Positions 2,884-46,294 of a stretch of 64,000 nt of DNA are shown one piece after another. A program made the position numbers and the translations under genes. The stretch comes from Salpingoeca rosetta (lineage: Eukaryota; Protista; Choanoflagellata), in contig JAWQFM010000031.1 in the NCBI GenBank assembly GCA_033442325.1, positions 732,025 to 796,024 on the forward strand. The letters run 5' to 3'. Numbering within the stretch: position 1 is the stretch's first letter; each line of letters opens with the position of its first letter. The notes under the pieces are model-generated. The model was not told the origin of the DNA and searched no databases. It saw only the letters and a list, made by a program, of their open reading frames with translations.

Positions 2884-9527
<6,644 letters not shown>

Positions 9528-30070: not shown

Positions 30071-30926
30071 CGCTCGTCGTCGATGTGGCGGGGTGGTCTT
30101 TGTGGCAAGGCAGTGGTGGAGGTGGGTTGTGTTGTGTTGTGGAGTGTGTCAGAAAAATGGAGCACGACAGCACATAAAGGAGTTGATTGCGGCTGGAAAC
30201 GAAAACATACAGCACAAATTGTTGCTTGATTCTGCTGACTCAGCTGCCCCAGTGATTGAAGGGAAGTAGGAGCTGACTTCGCCACAGCTTCGCCACAGAG
30301 AGGGCGCGATGCGGATTGTTTGTGGTCATTTTTCGCCAATTTTCGAGCCATGATTCTCCTTGCTTGCAAGCATTCGCTGCAGCAGCAGAGGATATGACGA
30401 TGCGCATGCACACAAAAGCCACACAAAACACAGCAGTGACACGTTGCTGAGTACACGGCGATGTTTCGCAACTGCGCTTCCATCGGCGATGTCCCCGCAG
30501 AGCACTCCCACACGCACACACGCAGGAGAAGCAGAGCGAGTTTGTTTGTTTGTTTTTCCGTCGTGACATCCCCACCGCTGTGGGGCATGCAGAGGAGAAT
30601 GAAGCGGGGAATACATGGGCTGTTTTCTCTTTGTTTTGGTTTGTGTTTGCGGCGTGGGGTTGTGCGTCAACAGCCCGCGCCAAAAGGACAGCAAGCATGC
30701 ATGCCAGCCAGAAAAGAAGCGAAGAAGGCCGCGCAAGCGCGTTAGCTTCAACTTGCAATGGCAACAACAACGACAACAGCCGCGACAACAATGCCTGTGC
30801 CGCCTTCACAACTTTAGCTGTGGGAGAATTCGTGATGCAGAGCACTTGCGTCGTCGCATTTCTCCTTGCACCAATATCACCACCTGCAACAACACCAGCA
30901 ACAACACCTGCCTCAGCCAAGCGCCG

Positions 30927-31625
30927 ATGTCTCTGGTATTGCAGCCACGCCCTACACCGAGGGTGCGGCGTGGATGCGTTGCACTCCTGGTTCTGGCAGT
31001 GAGCCTTGGGGTTCTCGCCGTTTCCCATCCACTTCAAGCTAAAGCCCTGAGGTATGCGTGCATGTGCATGTGTGACTGTGACTGTGAGTGTTGTGTGTCT
31101 GTGTTTTTGTGTTGCGTTGTGTTGCATTGTGGCTGTGTCTGTGTTTTGTTGCATTGTGGCTGTGTTTGGTTGGCGTGGACGTATTTGGGTGGCTTGCCAC
31201 ACTGCCGTCATCGTCGTGTAGTTGCCCTCGCATCACGAGACAGCGCTATCCTCACACCCAACTCGAAACGGCTTGCCTCATTCGTTTTGGCCCCCCCTTC
31301 CCTTTACGATCCCTCACATGCTTTGTTGCGTGCTTTGATCTTGCTTGTCTGTGTGCTTTGCTGTGTCTCTGTGTGGCGTGTCCTGCGACTGCAGTGCTTC
31401 AGCAGATTCCTCCTCCCTCCCTCGCCTGCGTCAGCGCCGTGATGTGAGATGCGCACTTGCGCTTTATCGTTTTGATTTGATGATGCACACGTCAAGCGAG
31501 TTTGTGTGGTTTGTGAGCGCGTGGCTCATGTGTCAACTGCGCGTTTTGCTCCGTGTGTGTGTGTGTGTGTGTGTGTGCGTGTGTGTGTGTGCGTCTCTCT
31601 CATTCACACACGCACACACACACAC

Positions 31626-31658
<33 letters not shown>

Positions 31659-32767
31659 TGCACGCACCCCCTCCTGCACGCAGGTCCCGTCTGCTCCCCC
31701 GAGGAACCCGACGACCACGCCCACACCTGGTGGCGCGTTTGCCGTTTCGTGGGAGGCGCCCGACCCCGGCACGACCAACGGCGCCATCACCGGGTATGTG
31801 ATCCGCATCCGCCCCACCGCTCCACAGCCCCCGACGTGGGCCTACGGCAATGCCAGCCTCGACGCCACGGACGTGGAGGTGTCATCGAGCACCTTCTCCT
31901 ACACCCTGGCCGACGAGCTCTCGTTCCCGTTCTCTGGCTACGATGTCGGCGTCGCCGTCAAGAATGCCGAGGGCTTTGGCCCCTTTGCCATGCTCTCCGT
32001 CGACCCGCCAAACAGCATTCCGTCCGGCCAGCCGCGCTCCGTGTCCACGTCCCTCCCACCTGTGGACCCGATGACCTACCCGCCAGACGCGGACGAGGTC
32101 ATCGTGCAGTGGACCGTGCCTGCAGGCATCTGGTTCCGCAACGCGCCCGCCATCGGCTTTGACCTCGTGGCCACGCCCGTGCCGGGCAGCACCACGGACG
32201 AAGTGGTGACCGTCCGCTTCCCCAAGCAGTGGCAGGACGGCGACTCGCCCGACGAGCAGCTCACGGCGTCCATCACGGGCCTCACCCCGAACACAGAGTA
32301 CGTCGTGCTCGTGTACACGATTGGGCTGGACGGTGACCGCAGCACCGCTTCCTTCATGACCACGGAGAAGACGCGTCCGCACCTGCCCACGGTTGCACCT
32401 GCGGGCCTCAGCGTAGACGACACCTCTGCCACGACCTTCAACCTCTCCTGGGACGCCATGAGTGCCAGCACACCGGGCAGCAATGGCGACATCGTTGGCT
32501 ATCGCATCTACCACGTGCCCACCGCCGACCGCGGCTGCACCAACATGGCCTGCGCCCCACCCACACCCTGCCAGGAGGACCCGCGCTGCGAGTTTGGCGT
32601 GTGCACGTACACCAACAAGCCCAACTTCACATCCTGTGATGATGGCAACGCCCACACCGTCAGCGACCACTGTGAGGCCGGCGCATGCATCGGCACCCTC
32701 GTCAACCAGCACATCGATCAGCAGCCCGTGCACCGCCACATTTACATGAACGTGAGTATTTTGTTTG

Positions 32768-33099: not shown

Positions 33100-34469
33100 C
33101 ACTCACACACACACACACACTCACACACACACACACTCGAACGCACACACGCACGCACGCACGCGCTCGCAGGTACCCTTCTTGGAGTGGCTCCAGCGTC
33201 TACAGATATGCAGAGGATGGCACGTACAAGACCAACTTTGGCACCAGCTCAAGTCAGATCATGCAGCTGTGGGGCGAGCCTGACTCGCTGTACTACTACA
33301 CCGCCAACTGGGGGTACAATTACTGCCGCAAGATTGGGCCCTTCCCCAGCACCAGCGTGAGGTGGACGTACACCCCGTCCCCTGCCACCACCGTCGGAGG
33401 CATCGCAACAGACAGCAACTACGCATACTGCATTCAGAACGGGCGATCCACTGTGCACGTGCTCAACAAGGAGACCGGCTCGCTCGTCCGCACGTTTGAC
33501 CTGACTGGCGGCAGCATCGGCAGCCTCAACGGTGGCTTTGCAGTTGTCAACGACAAGATCTACTACGGCACTGGCCAGTACTTCTACCGCCACAACCTGG
33601 AGGATGGCACCTTTGATGGCTTCAGGTGTGTGTGTGTGTGTGTGTGTGCGTGTATGGAGTTGTACGCGAATGGTTGGACGTGCGTGTGCGTTTGCATCAG
33701 CCCTAATGTCATGAAGCTGATGCAGTGACACTCACATGCTGTCGCCTATCCTTCCACTTGTTCTCAGGTTCCAAACCATTCAGACCATCAGCAACATGGC
33801 ATTCACGGGTCAGGACTTGTGCATCAGCCCCAACAGCGATAACGTGTATTGCTATCAGGTGCGGTCATGTGTGCGTGTGTGTGTGCATCTATGTGTGTGC
33901 GTGTGCGTGCGTGCGTGCGTGCGTGCGTGCGCGCGTGTGTGTGCTTATTCATTGAAATGCTTCACGCTGTCACCCCTCCCCCCCAATTTCCTCGTCCTCC
34001 ACACTCCCTGCTTCGCTTCAACGGCCTCATTCACATGACACCACTCTGCTTCAACTCACACCGCCCCTCAGGTCATCTCACACAACATCTGGAAGCCCGA
34101 CGATGGCGCACATCTGCTGGACACCGTCAACGCATACACTTCACTGTATGTTCATATCTAGCGTTCCAGCGCTGTGCGTGGCACACATGTACTTGGTGTG
34201 CATTGTGTGCAGTTGTGCATCGTGCGCACACGTGATTTGTGCAATTGTGTTTGTTATTGTGTTCATTGTGTTCATTGTGTGCGTGGTGTGCGTGTGCGCT
34301 GCCCTCGTCGTGTCTTCTCATCTCTGGTGCCTTTCGTCTTCCTTCTCTTTTCCCTTCCCAATCTCCGCAGGTCCATGAACACACGCTCCTACGCCGGCGG
34401 CTTTGCGCCCATGCACCGAGAATACTGGTGCGTGCCTTGAGAGCAACCGCCCTGAATACCCTCAAGCCG

Positions 34470-34546
<77 letters not shown>

Positions 34547-34548
34547 CG

Positions 34549-34595
<47 letters not shown>

Positions 34596-35544
34596 TTCGG
34601 TTTTTGCACCCGTTCACCCCGTCGTTGTGTGATCTGCGTCAAATTGGTTGCACAGGTACCCCTACTGGTCAGGTTCAACCATCTACCGGGTACGTGAGGC
34701 TTGTGATGGGGTCTTCATGTAGCATTGGTGTGGTTGTTATCTTTCACCTTTCAGCTGTTCAGGCACTCTCTCTTTCTTCTCTCTTGCTGGCATACATGTG
34801 TGTGTCTGTCTACCTGCATTGTGCCCGTGTCTTACTGCCTCTCTCACTCACACACACATACTCTACACACACACACACTCACACACACGCACACACACAC
34901 ACACACATGCACACACTCACTCACACACACTCACACACACACTCACACACACTCTACACACGCACCAACTGGCACTTGCAGTACACGTGGAAGGGCTACT
35001 ACATTGGCGCGTTCAATGCCGTGAATGGTGTTGGGAGCATCCGCCAGCTGTGGGGATCCCCCGACTCGCCCCACTACTACCTGGCTGCCAGCAACTACAT
35101 CTACAAGGCCACGTGGCCGCAGAACCAGCTCGTGTGGTCCTACAACCTTGGCACGACTGCTGGCGGTGTCACCACGCACGGCGACAGCGTGTATGCTATG
35201 CGAGCAACGACCAACCTCGTGTATGTGCTGCGCGCGACGGATGGCGAGCTGCAGCGCACGTTCAACCTGGACTCGTCGAGCGGCGATAACTTCTCCAACA
35301 TGTTCGGTGGCTTGGTTGCTGTCAAGGGCAGGCTGTTCCGTGGCGGCAGAGACAACGCCAGGTTCTACAGGTCAGTCGGCGGTAGTGTTGCGATATGTGT
35401 GATAGTGTGATAGTGTGAACATGCGTGGACGCGTGTGTGTCTGTGTATGCATGTGTATCCCATGCGTCATGCGTAACAACGACCCTCATGGTACATCCTA
35501 TGTGTATGTTTGCGCGCGCACACACACACACACACACACACGCA

Positions 35545-35603
<59 letters not shown>

Positions 35604-36197
35604 CCAACCAACCAGGCGGTGGCCACGACCTTCGTTTCTACTCCAACTGTGAGCGCGTTAGCACAAACCCCAACAGCTATCGAATCGACACCGGAGGTTA
35701 CTCCAACTCCTGGGCAACCGGCTCCAGCAGCATCTACGTCGATGAGATGGAGGTGTTCTACCTGACCGAGGACGCGTATGACCCGTGCGATGGTATTGTG
35801 TGCCCAACGAACCCGTGCACCCCCACCAACGTGTGCCAGCTTGGTGTGTGCGTGTCCACCACCATCCCTGACGGCACCCCCTGCGACGATGGCGACGCCA
35901 CGACGGCGTTTGACGCATGTGTCGCTGGCCAGTGCGTGGGTGCTGCGCGGTACTCCAACACGTCCTCCTACACCCTCGACGACCTCCACCCCGGACGCAC
36001 ATACGCCGTGCAGGTGCAGGCGTACACCAGCATTGGCGGCGGTCCGCTCAGCGATGCCGTTCACGGCACCACACTCGAGGCGCCACCATCGTCTGGCCCT
36101 GTGGACGTCGCCGGCACAGCACTGTCTGATTCGAAGATTAAGCTCACATGGAACGCACCAGCCAACCCGACACACAACGGCCGCCTTCTTGGCTACG

Positions 36198-36237
<40 letters not shown>

Positions 36238-38263
36238 TTTGTTTGTGTGTGTGCCTGCATGTGTTTTGCTGTCTTGTGTTTCCGTTTGTGGTTGCTTGGC
36301 ACTGAACCAGCTTTCAGCTTTGGCCGTGTTCACTTGTTCACCTCCACCGCTGTCTCCCACCACTCACTTCAGGTGTACATTGCCTCTGCTGGCGGCCCGG
36401 CCGCGTTCGTGACGAGTCTCAACTACTACACCTTCACGGTCACGGGCCTGCTGCCTTACACGGAGTACACCTTCTACCTGACCACGTTCAACGGTGCTGG
36501 TGCGTCACCGCCATCCGAGAGCATCACTGTGCGAACACAGGAGGCACCGCCCGGCCCACCATCCAACGTGCAGGCTGACGAGGAGCTCTCTGACAACGGC
36601 GAGGTGATCACCGTCAGCTGGCAGCCGCCGTACGAACCAAACGGCATCGTCATCAAGTACACCATCTACTACCAGAAGTGAGTGATTTTGTGTATGTGTG
36701 TGTGTGTGTGTGATTTAGCGCTTGGATGCACTCTTTACGCCATGCTCACACGTGGCGATTCCTCTCTTGTCCGAATCATCGTCGTCCCCTCAGGCTCGGT
36801 GGCACGTGGCAGTCCGTGACCACGTCCAGTGGCAGTGTGCGGTCCGTTGAGATTGATGGCCTGGACCCCATCTCCACCTATGTGGTGCAGGTGTCTGCGT
36901 GGACAGCAGCTGGCGAGGGCGAGCGCAGCAACACCATCGCGCCCACCACCGGTCAAGGCATTCCCCGCACGCCGCCCGACAACGTCGACGCCAACGCTCT
37001 CAGCAAGACGGCCATCAAGGTGTGTGTGTGTGTATGTATGTATGTACTAGTTGCACTGCCTCGCTCACTGACAACACCACTCATTCCCCACTTCCCACCA
37101 CCCCACCGCGCCCACCAGGTGACGTATGACCTGCCGCCGTCGGATGAGGGCGAAGTCGTCGAGTACAGCATCTACTACACACCAGGTGCGCTGGTGCATG
37201 ATGGATGGTGCGAATTGTTTGAACCAATCACATGTCGGGACTGATGCTCTCGTGCTTACATCGTCAGTCGACATGAGCATTATGCCATTCGTCACCTCAC
37301 AGTGTCACTACGTGGCTGTGTGTATGTGTCCTTGTACTGAACCCCAGAGCCACTTCCTTCCTCATGTGAGGAAATCAGCTGTCACGCTCGCGACACCTGC
37401 CACGATGTTGGCGAATGCATCCACGATCCATTCGTAAGTATGTGTGTGTCTGTGTGTTCGCACGGAAGAGTCGCACGAGCGCCAGCACCAGCACATACGC
37501 ACACATGCACATGTGATTGTGTTCGCGCGCACTAATGACTCCTGCATGTCCTTGTCCAGTATGGTCCAATGTGCACCGCTCCGGCCAAGCGCGATGGCAC
37601 CGAGTGCGACGACGGCGACGACAGGTGAGCCGGGACCCTTGTCGTTGTCATCGTGCACTCTCGCAGGACATGCGTAGAACGAGCATGCAGTTGTGCGTTT
37701 GTGGTGCCTGCCTTCACTGTAGCTCTCATACGCCATGTACGCACGCGCGCGCACACACACACACACACGCACATGCACCTACACACACATAATACAACGC
37801 GCTCACAACGTACCTACACGCCGCATGTGGCCGGCTTGCAGCACTGGCTTTGACACGTGCGTGATGGGGCAGTGTCGCAGCGTGCCGCGGCCCCAGCCCG
37901 TGTCTCCAGTCACGTCGACGTTCAGCGGCACGTGGTCGACACGCAGTTACGGCATGGCATACAACCCGCGCCGCAACGAGTGGTGGTTCCCCGAGTACAC
38001 ATCTTCGTCCACAGGCACGGTCGTTTACCGGTGAGTGGGGCTGCTGTTACAGGGGGGAGGCATTGTGTGTGCTTCCACGCTCCGTGTCATGCACGCACAA
38101 CCAGACTTTTCGCACTCTCGCACATTTTCTCACATCCTGTCCATTGCATCGCGTTGTGTTGTGTTCCGCTGCCGGTATCAGGTACTCTGCCGACGATCTG
38201 ACGACGCTCGTTGGCCGCTTCCGCATCCAACAGCGCCGATACGTGAGTCGCATTGCTGGAGTT

Positions 38264-38340
<77 letters not shown>

Positions 38341-38981
38341 CGCTGTGGCATCACACATGGCATCCTCAACCGTCTCCTCTCACTTCTCATTCCACACAAA
38401 TGCCCTGCACTTTTTCTTCTTGGTTGCGTGCTTGCAGCTGATGCAAATATGGGTGCACGTGGATGAAACGTACCTGCTCAACACCTACACGGACAACTAC
38501 GTCTACCGCTACGGCCCCTTCCCTCTCGTGACGGTGAGCATGCATGCTTGTGTCTGCGCGCCTGCGTGTGTGTGTGTGTGTTTGTTCGTGTGTTTGCCAG
38601 TGTGTGTGTGAAAATGCGTGTGTGTGTTTGATTGATTGCTTGTTTGTGTCTGTGTGTCTGTGTGTGTATGTTCGAACGTGTTTGTGGCGGTTGTGCGTCG
38701 TGCAAGCAACCACACGTGCACCACCATGACCATACACTCACGCGTCGATGCTTACCATGGCGTCAACCTATGCCCTGCAATACTTCTTCCGCCTCCCCTT
38801 GCCACAGCAACTCTGGGCGTACAACTTTGGCACGACCGTTGGCGGTGTGTCGCTGCACGATGGTGTCGTGTATGCCATGCAGAGCGGCAGCTACAACATC
38901 CGCGTCCTCGACTGGGAGACGGGCCAACTCCAGCGCTCTTTCTCGTCAGTGCATTCGGAGGCACTTCCTCTGTGTACCTGC

Positions 38982-39031
<50 letters not shown>

Positions 39032-41365
39032 TGCGTGTGAGTGTGGTGTGTACCTGCTCCGTGTGTGTGTGTGTGTGTGTGTTTGTGTTTGTGTTTGTGT
39101 CGTCGTACTCAACTTGGACTTAGCGTGCTTGCTGTCGTCTCACGAACGCCACTCTTCCTTCCACGCCCTGCTCCCCCCGCACACCACGAACAGGCTGAGC
39201 GGCTCGCCTCAAGGGTTCTCCAACATCTACGGCACATTTGCAGTCGTGAGCAACAAGATCTTCGTCGGCGACTACAACGACAACGACATGTACCGGTGAG
39301 CGTGATGGCTCTTGTGTTGCTGTTGTGTGGTCATGTTAGTGAACTGTGCTTCTGCTGTGTAACGATGCGCCTGCATGCATGCACACGCATTCAAGCAAGC
39401 ACACGCTCATACGCGCGCACACACAATTCACACACACGCGCGTTTGCCTTGCCACTGTGCCGTTTAGATTTGATCTTCAAACGTATCAGTACGACAACGT
39501 GCATTGGACGGCCTCGTACCAGACACAAAAGCTTGGCTTTGACGGCCAGCATCTCTGCATCGCTTCAGGGGATCCTGTCGAATGCTGGAGAAGTGAGTCG
39601 CCGCGCTCTCGCTTGTTTGGCTTCATTTTCTGTCTCATGGCTCTGGCCACGGGTTACATCTGCATCTGTGTCATGCTTGTCTCTTTGCTATCTCCGATAC
39701 ATGCCCTCATCCCTTCAACTCATCATCACTTCAACCCCTCGGCCAACGCCACCCCCGTCTTGTTCACCGCACGTGATCACCGCAGTTGTGGACGAGAATG
39801 TGTACGGCGACCGCACCGTCATCTCTGCCAATGCGCCGGCACAGGCCATCATGGGCTCTGAGATCCTGACAAAGGACATGAACCTGGCCATCTCCAAAGA
39901 GGTGTCGCCCAACAGCGATTCGAGCTTCAAGCTCTGCTTCCGCGCATCAGACCACGGCTTCTCCGGCTCCACCTTCCACGCGCGCTGCGACAACAAGGGC
40001 CAGACGGTTGTCGTTGTCCGTTCGACAGAGGGCAGCCCGCAGGGACCGCGCGTATTTGGCGCCTTTGCTCCCAACAGCTGGCGGTCCGACACGTCCACGT
40101 ATCTCCGTGCCGATGATGCCTTCCTCTTCCGTTTTGTCAACAACGGCCAATTCGAGCGCACAGATCTCCTCAACTATCCGGAGTACGCCCAGTACACGCG
40201 CCCAGGCTACTGCCCTGAGTTCGGTTCGTTGTCGTCGTATTTGTGTTTGTGCATGTATCTTGTGTTGGTGTTGATGGGCTCGGTTGCTCTTGCCTTCGTT
40301 GCTGGCGTGCGCAAGTCCGTTTGCACACACACACATGCACTCACACACATGCACTCACACACACGCACTCACTCACTCACCTTGCCTCACTCACTCACTC
40401 ACTCACTCACTCACTCACTCACTCACTCACTCACTCACTCACTCATTGACGCACATGCAGGCAACTCTGATTTCCGCATGTCAACGGACTGCCGGTCCGG
40501 ATACACCAGCACGAATGCTTACACGTGAGTTTAATGCATGCAGTTGTGTTTGGACTTCAATGCATCTGTGCTGCAACAAATGTTGTCATTTCCTCATACT
40601 CATCGCCATCCATGCTGTTGCGTGTATCCGTGCTATTGCTGAGCGCAGTGTGCACCAGAGCAGCAGCACGTACAACAACGAGTGGTTGACTGGCTCCTAC
40701 AACAGCTGGCAAGTGGATGACGTCGAGGTCTTCTACCGCGTCGACGAGTCCGCAGATCCATGCTTCGACGTGGTGCGTACAGCAGCGCTCGCGTGCACTT
40801 GACACGTCATTGTGAGCGAATGTGGGGGTTGCGTTTGTCCATGTTGCCAGTGTCACGAATCCCTTCGTGTCAATCTCATCCTCGTGTGCATCATGCATTG
40901 TCCAAACAACACAGACATGTGATCCACCAATGGGTCAGTGCAAACTGCCCGGTCGCTGCGTCAGCGGCGAGTGCGTCTATGATGTCGCCCCGAATGGCAC
41001 CCCATGCAACGACGGTCAGTATTGCGAAGTGTGTGTGTGGGAGGGGGGAATCTATGCGTTTGAGAGCATCGAGTCGCCATTGCACGCCTCCTCGTTCCTC
41101 ACCAACAAACACACAAACGTGCCACTCCCCTCCGAACAACGCACCCTTTGCAGGCGACGATGCGACGGTGTTTGACACGTGCCAGGACACCGTCTGCGTT
41201 GGCCGCCATCCCGTCATCACGGAGGACAACCAGCACACGTTCACTGGCCTCAACCCGTACACCACCTACGCCTTCCGTGTGGCTGCCCGCACCGTCCGCG
41301 GTCAGGGCCCGGCCTCTGACGCCGTCCGCGCCCGCACTCTCTCCGGCACCCCAACAGGTTGGCGC

Positions 41366-41453
<88 letters not shown>

Positions 41454-42984
41454 CGTGCTTTGAGTGCGCGTGATTCCTTCGCCTGGCTGCCTTGTCCCTC
41501 ACACACGATCGTTTGTGCCCTGTCCTCATCCACGTGCCATTTCTTGCCTTTCCTTCCCTCCTCAACCCTTCAGGTCCACCCCAGGATGTGGTGGCGCGAG
41601 CGGCAGCAACGACCGTGTTGCACATCACGTGGAAGCAGCCGCTGTTTGGCGAGCGCCACGGCACCATCTCATCGTACAAGCTGTGGGTGCAGCGCCTGAA
41701 CAGCATGCGCCAGCCAGCGGGCACACCCTGGACCATCGTCACGGGCAACGACCTCACCAACTACAACCTCACAGACCTCGACGCATACACATACTACCAG
41801 GTTTGTGTGGGTGTATGACCGTGTTGTTGTTGGCATCATTTGCTCAACTTGCTCTCTGTCTTTATTGACCGGGTTTGTACCACCACGCACACACACGCAC
41901 ACACACACTCACGTACACACACACACACACACGCACAACTGCAACAACCACAACAACAGGTCAAGGTGGCTGCCTCCACCATTGATGGCCTGGGTCCGTA
42001 CAGCGATGCGTCGATTGCTCGAACAGCAGAGGGAACACCACCCGTTGCACCAACGAACGTGCAGGTGGACAGCACAACAACCGAGACTGTCACGCTCAGC
42101 TGGGACCCAATCAGCCCACTCGAGGCTGATGGCATCCTCATTGGCTACACCATCTCTGTGCGTCAGGGACCAAGGAGCGACTGCACACGCCACCCCGCCA
42201 GCATCGACGTTGTCTACATCGACACACCACGTGTTGAGACCTACACCGTGCTTGAGTTGGAGGACACTGCTGTGTATCCGTACGAATTCCAGGTTGCAGC
42301 CCGCACTGCTGCTGGCGAGGGCGTGTACTCTGCATCAGCGCTGCACATGACGAGCGGCGGGTCGCAGGTGTGCTCCGGCCCGTCCACGTGGACATCAGAT
42401 GTCACCAGCACATCCGCCAACGTGTGGGTGAAGCCACCGCCAACGGTTGAGCTGAACGGCAACACCATCGCCACCATCAACGTGACCGTCACGGCCATCG
42501 AGGACTCCAATCGCCGCCCCATCACGGGCGCAACACCGGCATGGCTCGTGTTCTCTGCTGCTGATGGCTTCAACGCCAGCCAGGCGCTGTCTGGGCTCGA
42601 CCCGTACACGGTGTACAGCGTGGAGGCCGTGGTCATCACCACGACTGGCGTGTCTTCGCCCACGTCTGCTCCCTACACGTTCCGCACCGCCGAAGCGACG
42701 CCAGGTGCTGTGGGCTCCCTCATTGCACAAGAGGTTGGCGACGTGGTGAAGGTGTTGTGGACGCCGCCATCGCCGGCAAACGGAGCGCTTCAGTATCGCA
42801 TCACATTCACGCCCGCCGTTGACGGCACGAGCGAATTCACCACGTCCTACGCCAACTTCAGCCTCGACGTCCTCTCGGTTCGTTGTGTGTGCGTATGTAT
42901 GTGTATTTGTGTGTCTGTGTGTATTTGTGCATGTGTGTGTGTGTGTGTCATCTTGCAAGCACCCTTAGTGGACAGCATGTCACT

Positions 42985-43028
<44 letters not shown>

Positions 43029-44359
43029 CACACACACACACGCACACATTCTCCACCTTGGGTTTCTCTCCTTGCAGGGCACGACGTACACCGTCAGGGT
43101 TGTTGCGCTGACGGGCGCAGGTGATGGCCCAGCACGCCAGACGACGGTAGAGACTGTCCCGGCCAACGTGGCTGCACCTGTCATAACGCTTCAATCCGCA
43201 GCAGAGACAGAGCTGCGGCTCAAGGCCACTTGGACCAGCCCACTCACTGCCTTCCACCTCCAATACAAAGCAGAGGGGGTGAGTTACGTGCGCGTATGCT
43301 GTGTACGCGTGTGTGAATGTGAACGTGTGTGCACTTGCATTTGTGTGTTGGTTGCTTCCCTCAGATGGTGCTTCTTGTCCACTCACTAAGCTTCACATGC
43401 GTGTTCTTTGCTTCTCTCATGTCCTTCTTTGCTCCACAGGATGATGATTTCAGCGATGTCATGGACTACGCCGTGTCTACCAATGCACGTCAACACACCT
43501 TCACCCTCTCTGGCCTGGAGCACTCCACATCCTACACCGTCCGCGTTCAGGCCGACACCGACGATGGTCTCGGCCTCACCGCCCAATACGAGCACGCCAC
43601 CGCCGTTGTTCCTCCAAGCGCCCCGCAGACAGTCGTGGTGCGTCATTGAATGTGTGTGTGTGTGTGTGTGTGCGCGCGCGCGTGTGTGTGTGCGTGTGTG
43701 TGATGGCTGTCTTTGCCAGGTGCCCACTGTACTCACCAACGCCCGTTCACATACACGTGCATACACACACTCTCTCTAACAGGCCATGGCCGTCAACAGC
43801 ACGCACGTGCGCGTAACGTGGTCTCCTGTCATGGCTGAGCATGGCTGAGCATCGCCTTGGCGAGGTGCGCGGGTACCGCCTGTCCATCGAGCAGGGCATC
43901 AGCCTCCTGCCACCAATCGATGCCGGCCTCACCACGTGGTACATCGTTGGCCGTCTCAACCCCGTCACCACCTACCGCGTCTCCGTGATTGCGTACAACG
44001 ATGGCGGTGATGGCGATGCCAGCTCTCCGCAGTCGGTCATGACAGCGGCCACCGTGTGTGCAGATGACGAGTACGAGACGGCGCCACCCATGGGGGCAAT
44101 GGACCGCCAGTGTGGCCCCTGCTCGTCGTGCGGCTCTGGCATGTACGAGACGGCCGCCTGCACGCGCACCAGCGACACGATGTGCGCCGCATGCAGCACC
44201 ACCTGTGGCGAGGACGAGTGGATTTCGTCGCCCTGCACGGCCTCGTCCGATATCGAGTGCTCCGCGTGCTCTACGTGCGACCTCTCGGTCGAGAGCCACG
44301 TGGCCGACTGCACCCTCTTCTCCGACACCGTCTGCGTCCCATTCACCACGTATGTGTGT

Positions 44360-44412
<53 letters not shown>

Positions 44413-46294
44413 CGTGTGTGCGTGCATGTGTGGTTGTGTGTGTGGTTGTGTGGTTGTTGTGTGGTTGTCTCGTTTGAGAGTGTTGCAATGTTCAAGGCGT
44501 CTGCACTCAATTTCATGCGCGTGTGTGTGTATTGGCATTCACCATTGAGCAGGACGACGACCACGACCACCACAACCACAACAACGACTACTCTGCCAAC
44601 AACGACGTGAGTTGTCAACAGCAAACACAGAGCGTGCACCACACCCTTGCGTCCTCCTGCTTTGCTTCACTGCGTCTGTTATTCCCTGCGTGCTTGTACC
44701 TCCACGCTTGCTACACTTGCGGTACGCGCACCCTTGATGCTCACGCACCACACACCACACACCTCATCCTCCGCAATCATCACGACCAGCGTTCCATGCC
44801 ATCCAACGTGCGCCACGTGTGCTGGCGAGGCAGCTGACGAGTGCCTGTCGTGCCACGGCAGCTACAGCGTGTACCTTGGACGCTGCGTGCCATCGTGCCC
44901 CGCCTCCACATACAAGGAGAGCGGCCAGTGCTTGACATGCCCCGCCACGTGCGACATCTGTACGAGTGCTGACGTGTGTGTCACGTGCCGTCGCGGTTAT
45001 TTCCGCCATAATGGCGCGTGCGTGGAGGCCAGCAGCTGCCCCACTGGTTCCTACGCTGACGCCGACCTCGACACATGTGTGCCGTGTACCGCTGGCTGCG
45101 CCACGTGCAATGCCGATCGCTGCACGCAGTGCGCTGGCACCAAGCTGCTCCTGCCAACTGGCGATGAGTGCGTGGACGCCTGCCCGGACCAGTACTTTGC
45201 ATCCACCACGACGCTGGGCGCACGCGAATGCAAGGCGTGCGACACCTCGTGCAAGTCGTGCTCTGGCACTCTGCCGACACAGTGCACGGCCTGTTTCGAT
45301 GGCGAGGAGCTGAAGAGCGGCCGCTGCGTGCTGCCGGGTGGTGGTGGCACGACCAAGAGCCCAACAACACGTGACCCGTCTGCCTCCCAGTCTGGCACAG
45401 ACAGCACTGCTGACTCGAACACACTGATTTACGTCGCTGTTGCTGTTGGCGCCGTCATCGCCCTCGCCCTCATCATGATTGGCGTCGCGCTGCTTCGCCG
45501 CAAGAACGCAAAGGCAGCCAGTGGTGGTGCACACAAGTTTGATGGTCAGCAGGGCTCTACCATGGCTTCCTATCGCTCCGGCTCTCTCCACGGCCGTGAC
45601 ATGGTCATCTCCAACCCAGCGTACATGCTAAACGAGCCAAAGCCGTGGACCGAACAGCAGCAGCAGCAACAACAACAACAGCCGACGAAGAGACCCGCCA
45701 ACGACGCCGACATGGAGCGTGAGTGCGTATATGTGTGTGCGTATGTGTGTGTGTGTGCATGTGTGGCATGTGGGAGCTTGCTTCAGTTCCATTGATACAT
45801 GCATTCAACTCACCTGTGACTGCTCTCGTCACCACTCCGTGTTGTTGGTACAGCACTCTACGAGGACCAGGACATGTACGACGATTGTAAGTTGCAGACG
45901 TTGCCGTGCTCGATATCTCATTTCATGGCGTGTGCTACGAGTGCGTGCAGCTGCAGCAGCTGTTGCTGTTGTTGTTGTTGTTTCCGTGACATGCACATCC
46001 CAGCGTGACATGCACATCCCAGCGTGACATGCGCCCCCAGTAACACACACGCTCACACCATCCACTCGCCTTTCTCTTCGGTTGTTGTCCTGTGCCTCCC
46101 TGTTCATGCGAGCAGCTGAGCAGAATGAGGGCGGGTACCTGACCGTCAACCCCGACGATGATCGGATGGCCGCTGACAACAACGGTACGTCGCAGGATGA
46201 CGGCGAGGCCTTGTACGACGAGCCGTCCGCCATGCTGTCGCACAAGGACGAGGAGCATGAGAAGCCCCGTGATGACGACAGCAATGACGAGTGA
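30927..46294 (+). CDS. Giant type-I membrane receptor/adhesion protein: signal peptide, RQRR site, ~12 FN3, Cys-rich CDDG repeats, 3 beta-propeller-like repeats, 2 TLDc (first incomplete), TNFR-like and furin-like repeats, TM helix, Tyr-motif tail. Two frame lesions in this assembly
   Basis: Exon 1 30927-31051 ([22 protein letters not shown]). FN3 motifs ([25 protein letters not shown]; [19 protein letters not shown]). TLDc [41 protein letters not shown]-like [18 protein letters not shown]. Furin-like [42 protein letters not shown]. Stop at 46292-46294. Confidence 0.85.

What the first reader, a model, noticed from the sequence alone, without database searches (positions are those of the whole stretch)
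39786..40745. TLDc domain in a predicted extracellular position
Seen: a full TLDc signature ([69 protein letters not shown]) lies between the signal peptide (30927) and the only TM helix (~45425-45497). Established: characterised TLDc proteins (OXR1, NCOA7, TBC1D24, MEAK7) are intracellular, linked to V-ATPase and oxidative stress. Inference: here the fold is repurposed as an extracellular or lumenal binding module; extra Cys residues (KLCF, GYCP, TDCR) would suit disulfides.
Basis: partly seen in the sequence, partly recalled or inferred. Interest (0 to 1): 0.7.

Follow-up and report, generated by a model that had tools for sequence, protein, structure and literature searches.

The report
Extracellular TLDc domain in choanoflagellate receptor
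A protein domain known only as an intracellular partner of the proton pump (TLDc) sits here in the outside-facing part of a giant Salpingoeca rosetta surface protein. The same layout occurs in sister genes, in a related species and in bacterial surface proteins, so the fold has a second, unstudied life outside the cytoplasm.

Summary
Window 39786-40772 (+) carries three GT-AG exons that encode a complete TLDc domain: Pfam PF07534 at 74 bits, an AlphaFold model with pLDDT 93, and solved TLDc structures as the only significant fold matches.

The gene is Salpingoeca rosetta PTSG_09826. The domain lies in a cassette (Cys knot, propeller-like module, TLDc, Cys knot) nested inside a split FN3 domain. 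On either side are a signal-peptide-like N-terminus and FN3, TNFR and furin-like repeats, then one TM helix and an NPxY tail.

The extracytoplasmic placement is supported at family level:
- At least six S. rosetta loci carry the same layout.
- A complete 4500-aa Microstomoeca roanoka transcript ORF has a signal peptide, three TLDc domains and a single C-terminal TM.
- An S. rosetta adhesion GPCR has TLDc upstream of its GPS motif. This was already listed in a 2012 paper.
- Bacterial lipoprotein-type giant proteins carry the same module-TLDc pair.

There is a caveat for this copy. A 10-bp tandem duplication at 43830-43849 breaks the frame before the TM exons, and the first cassette has lost most of its TLDc. 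Even so, dN/dS on the TLDc exons is 0.02-0.13.

The scan noted the same thing on other DNA of this genome (paralogues and the GPCR). I rate it a new variant of a known kind, of moderate interest.

The parts
30927..31049 (+). Exon 1: start codon, basic n-region and 17-residue hydrophobic core (30963-31040), signal-peptide-like
   Evidence: The paralogue model P0001 starts at the homologous Met. The NCBI model starts further upstream, at 30615, in low-complexity sequence.
31393..31443 (+). Small exon ending in a dibasic RxRR motif, a possible convertase site
   Evidence: The motif is also present in P0001 and in the C14 paralogue. Its role as a cleavage site is inference.
31684..32751 (+). FN3 array and first Cys knot
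   Evidence: Pfam fn3, 3 stretches.
33174..35386 (+). Cassette 1: two propeller-like modules (33174-33623 and 34979-35386) plus small linking exons
   Evidence: Precomputed PQQ_2 in relatives.
35618..35790 (+). Remnant of TLDc-1. Only about the last 50 residues remain; the N-terminal exons present in paralogue C35 are missing at a (CA)n tract, 35387-35617.
36960..37184 (+). N-terminal half of the split FN3 (two exons, 36960-37022 and 37122-37184)
   Evidence: Pfam fn3 profile 2-38 on P0152:1250-1300.
37347..39591 (+). Cassette 2: Cys knot, then propeller-like module exons
   Evidence: weak PQQ_2. Similar to a bacterial module at 23-30% identity.
39786..40223 (+). TLDc exon A
40461..40524 (+). 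TLDc exon B
40649..40772 (+). TLDc exon C, running into the second Cys knot
40916..41329 (+). Second Cys knot, then the C-terminal half of the split FN3 (41222-41329)
   Evidence: Pfam fn3 profile 46-82. Cys positions.
41567..43637 (+). Further FN3 domains
43783..43849 (+). Start of an FN3 exon holding a 10-bp tandem duplication (43830-43839 and 43840-43849). The frameshift gives a stop at 43846-43848.
   Evidence: The duplication is absent in paralogues C14 and C30.
44057..44335 (+). TNFR/NGFR cysteine-rich repeats
   Evidence: Pfam TNFR_c6, 3 stretches, E 5.8e-15.
44797..45327 (+). Furin-like cysteine-rich repeats
   Evidence: Pfam Furin-like_2, E 3.2e-09.
45424..45495 (+). Single TM helix followed by basic residues
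   Evidence: Hydropathy 2.93.
45496..46291 (+). Short cytoplasmic tail over two exons, with NPxY at 45613-45624 and further Tyr motifs
   Evidence: The same motif types occur in the M. roanoka tail.

Best explanation
The TLDc domain is a real, selectively maintained module of the extracytoplasmic region of a giant mosaic FN3 protein (S. rosetta PTSG_09826 and at least five paralogous loci). It is delivered by a signal peptide. It sits in a disulfide-bracketed cassette with a propeller-like module, nested in a loop of an FN3 domain. In intact family members it is tethered by one C-terminal TM helix with an NPxY/Tyr-motif tail. It cannot reach the cytosolic V1 sector of the V-ATPase. Most likely (inferred) it acts as a non-catalytic recognition or scaffolding module together with its propeller-like partner, in adhesion or particle/ligand sensing, with the tail coupling to PTB/SH2-type adaptors or endocytosis. 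This particular copy carries a frameshift before the TM exons, so it would give a secreted truncated product or is starting to decay.
For: Shown:
- TLDc identity: Pfam; a profile match to all solved TLDc chains; an AlphaFold model with pLDDT 93.1 and pTM 0.90; Foldseek top 16 hits all TLDc, with TM by target up to 0.79.
- Context of FN3, TNFR_c6, furin-like repeats and a single TM.
- The FN3 domain is split around the cassette.
- The paralogues at C14 and C30 are collinear through the TM.
- The M. roanoka complete ORF P0002 has an N-terminal signal peptide, 18 fn3, 3 TLDc, TNFR and only one further hydrophobic helix, at 4411-4444.
- The S. rosetta adhesion GPCR P0083 has TLDc at 874-1035, before GPS at 1473-1519 and the 7TM.
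- Purifying selection on the TLDc exons: 11 synonymous against 1 non-synonymous difference to C35, and dN/dS 0.02-0.13 to three paralogues.
- The TLDc domains of the FN3-type receptors and their close unnamed relatives (12 rows, sources mostly unnamed) form one clade (SH-aLRT 99). It is sister (94) to a set dominated by bacterial signal-peptide or lipoprotein proteins.
- Clade-specific cysteines.
- Ten guessed-RNA runs from three studies hold about 0.46 of the words of 39700-41300, roughly what I estimated for the exon-only share.
Against:
- The 10-bp duplication and the loss of most of TLDc-1 suggest this copy may be non-functional or misassembled.
- The signal peptide was judged only by hydropathy and charge, not by SignalP.
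- No ligand, localisation or disulfide has been shown.
Confidence: 0.72

Rival explanations
1. This copy (PTSG_09826) is a decaying paralogue or pseudogene. Its TLDc is intact only because the damage is recent, so nothing about function follows from this locus itself.
For: A frameshifting 10-bp duplication is absent from two paralogues. The TLDc-1 N-terminal exons are deleted relative to C35. The NCBI model ends early, at 43776.
Against: dN/dS to C35 is 0.19 overall and 0.02 on TLDc. The share of words held by RNA-like runs fits an exon-only, spliced transcript. The duplication could be an assembly error. The family-level conclusion does not depend on this copy.
Confidence: 0.25
2. Translation starts at the upstream ATG (30615), as in the NCBI model. 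The first hydrophobic stretch then acts as the signal peptide and the second (30963-31040) as a stop-transfer helix, leaving TLDc cytosolic.
For: The ORF is open from 30603, and P0152 has two N-terminal hydrophobic stretches.
Against: The extra 104 residues are repeat-derived low complexity. Paralogue P0001 and M. roanoka P0002 start directly at a signal peptide. Cys-rich TNFR and furin-like repeats and an adhesion GPCR N-terminus are extracellular contexts.
Confidence: 0.04
3. The TLDc exons belong to a separate transcript that was fused by gene prediction.
For: None found. The annotated model is a prediction.
Against: The splice phases fit. The cassette is nested within one FN3 domain. The same order is seen in at least three paralogues and in a de novo transcript ORF of another species.
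Confidence: 0.02
4. The extracellular TLDc is an enzyme or redox-active module, for example handling oxidants at the cell surface, rather than a passive binding domain.
For: His55 is invariant and Cys58, Asp140 and Glu184 are nearly invariant across 60 domains of this subfamily. The family's historical link to oxidative stress is drawn from the literature.
Against: In this alignment the His of the Gly-rich motif is replaced in this domain and in one of the three M. roanoka TLDc domains. No catalytic activity is established for any TLDc in the papers I read.
Confidence: 0.1

Closest known systems
Cytosolic TLDc proteins (OXR1/Oxr1p, NCOA7, TBC1D24/Skywalker, mEAK-7, Rtc5p)
   Same: They share the Pfam family and the fold. 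These are the only significant PDB matches. The core Gly, Phe and Glu positions are conserved.
   Different: They are cytosolic and bind the V1 sector of the V-ATPase. Here the domain is behind a signal peptide, nested in FN3, carries extra conserved cysteines, and belongs to a different sequence subclass (FHxxCD type).
S. rosetta adhesion GPCR PTSG_09376 (EGD78309.1), whose TLD domain is listed in Krishnan et al. 2012, PMC3251606
   Same: It is from the same organism, has FN3 plus TLDc in an extracellular N-terminus, and its TLDc falls in the same clade.
   Different: It has a 7TM anchor with GPS instead of a single TM. The paper only lists the domain as new for adhesion GPCRs and does not comment on its topology.
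Bacterial giant surface or lipoprotein 'TLD domain-containing proteins' (e.g. Roseivirga thermotolerans P0165; metagenomic P0049, P0056, P0075, P0163)
   Same: They have signal or lipobox N-termini and TLDc next to the same propeller-like module. TLDc identity is 36% and the order is collinear. They form the sister group in the tree.
   Different: They are prokaryotic single ORFs with C-type lectin, MAM, MopE-motif or cadherin-like repeats. They lack the C3/C4 cysteine pair.
Mosaic type I receptors with propeller, Cys-rich repeats, FN3 and an NPxY tail (SorLA/LRP type; recalled from memory, a lead only)
   Same: The overall logic is the same: a large modular ectodomain, one TM helix and a short tail with a sorting or adaptor motif.
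   Different: There is no sequence relationship, and none of them contains TLDc.

Membership tests
TLDc domain (Pfam PF07534) | Score above the curated gathering threshold over most of the profile | tested here: met
   74.2 bits against 24.5, covering profile 5-167 of 170 on P0152. Exon A alone gives 59.4 bits.
TLDc domain (Pfam PF07534) | TLDc fold | tested here: met
   AlphaFold pLDDT 93.1. Foldseek probability 1.00 to 4acj, 7obp, 6r82, 7une and 7fde.
TLDc domain (Pfam PF07534) | Conserved core residues (Gly of the DGF and FGG motifs, terminal Glu-Val) | tested here: met
   Invariant or near-invariant columns of alignment A2 are present in the window's domain.
V-ATPase-interacting TLDc proteins | Cytosolic location giving access to V1 subunits | tested here: not met
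   Signal peptide, extracellular domain context, and nesting in FN3.
V-ATPase-interacting TLDc proteins | Physical binding to V-ATPase | not testable with these tools
   Needs biochemistry.
Type I single-pass membrane receptor | Cleavable N-terminal signal peptide | tested here: inconclusive
   Only a hydropathy and charge pattern, plus homologues that start at a signal peptide. No SignalP was available.
Type I single-pass membrane receptor | One TM helix in frame with the ectodomain | tested here: not met
   For this copy, the TM exon exists but a 10-bp duplication shifts the frame upstream of it. The feature is met in paralogues C14 and C30 at this site and in M. roanoka P0002.
Disulfide-stabilised extracellular variant of TLDc | Paired cysteines that are close in space | not testable with these tools

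The most novel reading that the evidence does not exclude
There is an ancient extracytoplasmic TLDc lineage shared by bacteria and choanoflagellates. It travels as a propeller-like-module plus TLDc supermodule, possibly by gene transfer between prey bacteria and choanoflagellates. In that case V-ATPase binding would be only one specialisation of a fold whose other role is ligand recognition outside the cell.
Probability: 0.3. Interest if true: 0.7.

Novelty: new variant of a known kind. Interest (0 to 1): 0.52.

Why it matters
Current work treats TLDc as the signature of V-ATPase regulators and oxidative-stress protectors, all of them cytosolic. A constrained extracytoplasmic clade shows that the fold has a V-ATPase-independent use. 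That clade comprises choanoflagellate receptors, an adhesion GPCR and bacterial surface proteins. It also gives a tractable system (S. rosetta genetics, recombinant ectodomains) in which to find what TLDc binds. Finally, it adds a case of a large cassette nested in an FN3 domain, and a possible bacteria-choanoflagellate shared module.

Tried and rejected
- I did not build or search a joined spliced model. Exons were searched one by one by reference, and the public models P0152, P0001 and P0002 were used instead.
- The 3' exons after the frameshift were analysed only as separate pieces.
I replaced it with a hydropathy and coordinate script.
- The search for related loci on genome contigs failed because alignment A2 was too diverse.
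- The Atlas search only repeated the TLDc assignment.
- An apparent TLDc-like match at 33716-33808 was rejected as chance, because another frame there encodes a conserved cassette exon.
- Literature searches for an extracellular, secreted or signal-peptide TLDc found nothing beyond the 2012 listing.

Full report
**Observation.** The window is eukaryotic, with short introns rich in (CA)n. On the + strand, three exons (39786-40223, 40461-40524, 40649-40772) join with GT-AG sites in phases 1 and 2. Exon A alone hits Pfam TLD at E 5.4e-16, and exon C hits the end of the profile. A search of 1.84 billion representatives with exon A returned S. rosetta PTSG_13098 (P0001) first. A word search then returned PTSG_09826 (P0152, 2429 aa), whose exons map at 97-100% to the window. 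So the window is S. rosetta supercontig C31, and the gene is already in public annotation. On P0152 the TLD hit is 74.2 bits and covers profile 5-167 of 170. A 60-sequence alignment (A2) gave an AlphaFold model with pLDDT 93.1 and pTM 0.90. Its 16 significant PDB matches are all TLDc domains: mEAK-7, zebrafish OXR2, NCOA7, Skywalker, Oxr1p and Rtc5p (by sequence profile). The domain is real.

**Context.** Pfam scans of the separate reading-frame pieces show the following:
- FN3 domains lie before, between and after two cassettes.
- Three TNFR_c6 repeats sit at 44057-44335.
- Furin-like repeats sit at 44797-45327.

A single strong hydrophobic helix lies at 45424-45495, followed by basic residues and a short tail with NPxY.

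The N-terminus (Met at 30927) has a basic stretch and a 17-residue hydrophobic core. A small second exon ends in an RxRR motif that recurs in two paralogues.

The cassette that holds the TLDc interrupts one FN3 domain. Profile positions 2-38 lie just before the first Cys knot, and positions 46-82 lie just after the second. A domain nested in an FN3 loop must be on the same side of the membrane as FN3. Apart from its two N-terminal hydrophobic stretches (residues 1-22 and 117-142), P0152 has no other hydrophobic helix.

**Family evidence.**
- The genome has at least six loci with this cassette (C35, C34, C14, C30, C3 and C17, besides C31), plus a few conventional TLDc genes.
- C14 and C30 are collinear from the N-terminal FN3 array through TLDc to the TM exon.
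- Microstomoeca roanoka P0002 is a complete ORF from a de novo transcriptome. It has an N-terminal signal peptide, 18 fn3 hits, three TLDc domains, PQQ_2-like modules, TNFR repeats, one C-terminal helix (4411-4444) and an NPxY-type tail.
- S. rosetta PTSG_09376 (P0083) is an adhesion GPCR with FN3 and TLDc upstream of GPS and the 7TM. Krishnan et al. 2012 had listed its TLD domain as new for adhesion GPCRs (PMC3251606).
- Among the closest TLDc relatives are proteins with signal peptides and EGF/LamG, MACPF or Stig1 repeats, and giant proteins with lipobox-type N-termini, C-type lectin, MAM and MopE motifs. A named example is a Roseivirga thermotolerans TLD domain-containing protein.
- A bacterial giant protein aligns with the S. 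rosetta cassette collinearly: the propeller-like module at 23-30% identity and TLDc at 36%.
- A quick ML tree places the 12 TLDc domains of the FN3-type receptors and their close unnamed relatives in one clade (SH-aLRT 99). That clade is sister (94) to a group dominated by these secreted bacterial proteins. BTB-type tandem TLDc proteins lie elsewhere. The tree is unrooted, so no direction of transfer is shown.

**Constraint and cysteines.** Nei-Gojobori estimates on ungapped exon alignments give dN/dS of 0.13-0.24 for the gene and 0.02-0.13 for the TLDc exons against three paralogues. Against C35, the TLDc exons differ at 11 synonymous sites and 1 non-synonymous site. Four cysteines (P0152 residues 1636, 1653, 1728, 1742) are conserved in the clade. 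Cys1728 is nearly clade-specific, and 1728 and 1742 are lost together in one M. roanoka domain. Cys1636 is common in secreted relatives but is Leu or Ile in BTB-type ones. This fits two disulfides. Spatial proximity could not be checked.

**State of this copy.**
- The exon starting at 43783 holds a 10-bp tandem duplication (43830-43849) that the C14 and C30 paralogues lack. It creates a stop at 43846-43848.
- This explains why the NCBI model ends early, at 43776. As assembled, the TNFR, furin-like, TM and tail exons are out of frame.
- Cassette 1 keeps only the last 50 or so residues of its TLDc. The missing exons are present in C35 and are replaced here by a (CA)n tract.
- The NCBI start at 30615 adds 104 low-complexity residues that the homologues lack.
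- These points leave about a one-in-four chance that this locus is decaying or misassembled. They do not affect the family-level conclusion.

**Expression.** Indirectly, ten guessed-RNA runs from three studies hold about 0.46 of the sampled words of 39700-41300, close to the roughly 0.48 that I estimate for an exon-only share.

**Mechanism.** Shown: the fold, the extracytoplasmic context and the selective constraint. Inferred: TLDc and its propeller-like partner form a disulfide-bracketed recognition unit displayed on an FN3 stalk, and the tail motifs, which are conserved in type with M. roanoka, couple to adaptors or endocytosis. Access to V-ATPase V1 is excluded by topology. A catalytic role is less likely, because the His of the Gly-rich motif is not kept in this domain or in one of the three M. 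roanoka TLDc domains.

**Novelty.** No paper I found discusses an extracellular or secreted TLDc beyond the 2012 domain listing. First readers of this scan noted the same feature on paralogous DNA and on the GPCR. I file it as a new variant of a known kind.

Noticed in passing
window 43830-43849: A 10-bp tandem duplication inside an FN3 exon shifts the frame. It is absent in paralogues C14 and C30 and explains the early end of NCBI model PTSG_09826.
   Followed up: yes
window 35387-35617: A (CA)n tract replaces the exons that encode the N-terminal three quarters of the first TLDc domain in paralogue C35. This is either a deletion or an assembly collapse.
   Followed up: partly
window 30615-30926: The NCBI model begins at an upstream in-frame ATG in repeat-derived, highly basic, low-complexity sequence. 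Homologues start at the Met equivalent to 30927.
   Followed up: partly
window 31393-31443; P0001 N-terminus; L016 about 4183-4260: An RxRR motif directly after the signal region is conserved in three paralogues. It may be a proprotein-convertase site.
   Followed up: no
window 45496-46291; P0002 C-terminus: The cytoplasmic tails of S. rosetta and M. roanoka share an NPxY motif and two further Tyr motifs, which hints at PTB/SH2 coupling.
   Followed up: no
P0163:4300-5100, P0049, P0056, P0075, P0165: Bacterial giant lipoprotein-type proteins carry the same roughly 200-aa propeller-like module (once or twice) followed by TLDc. This is a possible shared or transferred supermodule.
   Followed up: partly
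G000 C35, C34, C14, C30, C3:2335188, C17:746258: At least six paralogous loci carry the cassette. dS between copies is 0.08-0.47, so this is a recently expanding receptor family.
   Followed up: partly
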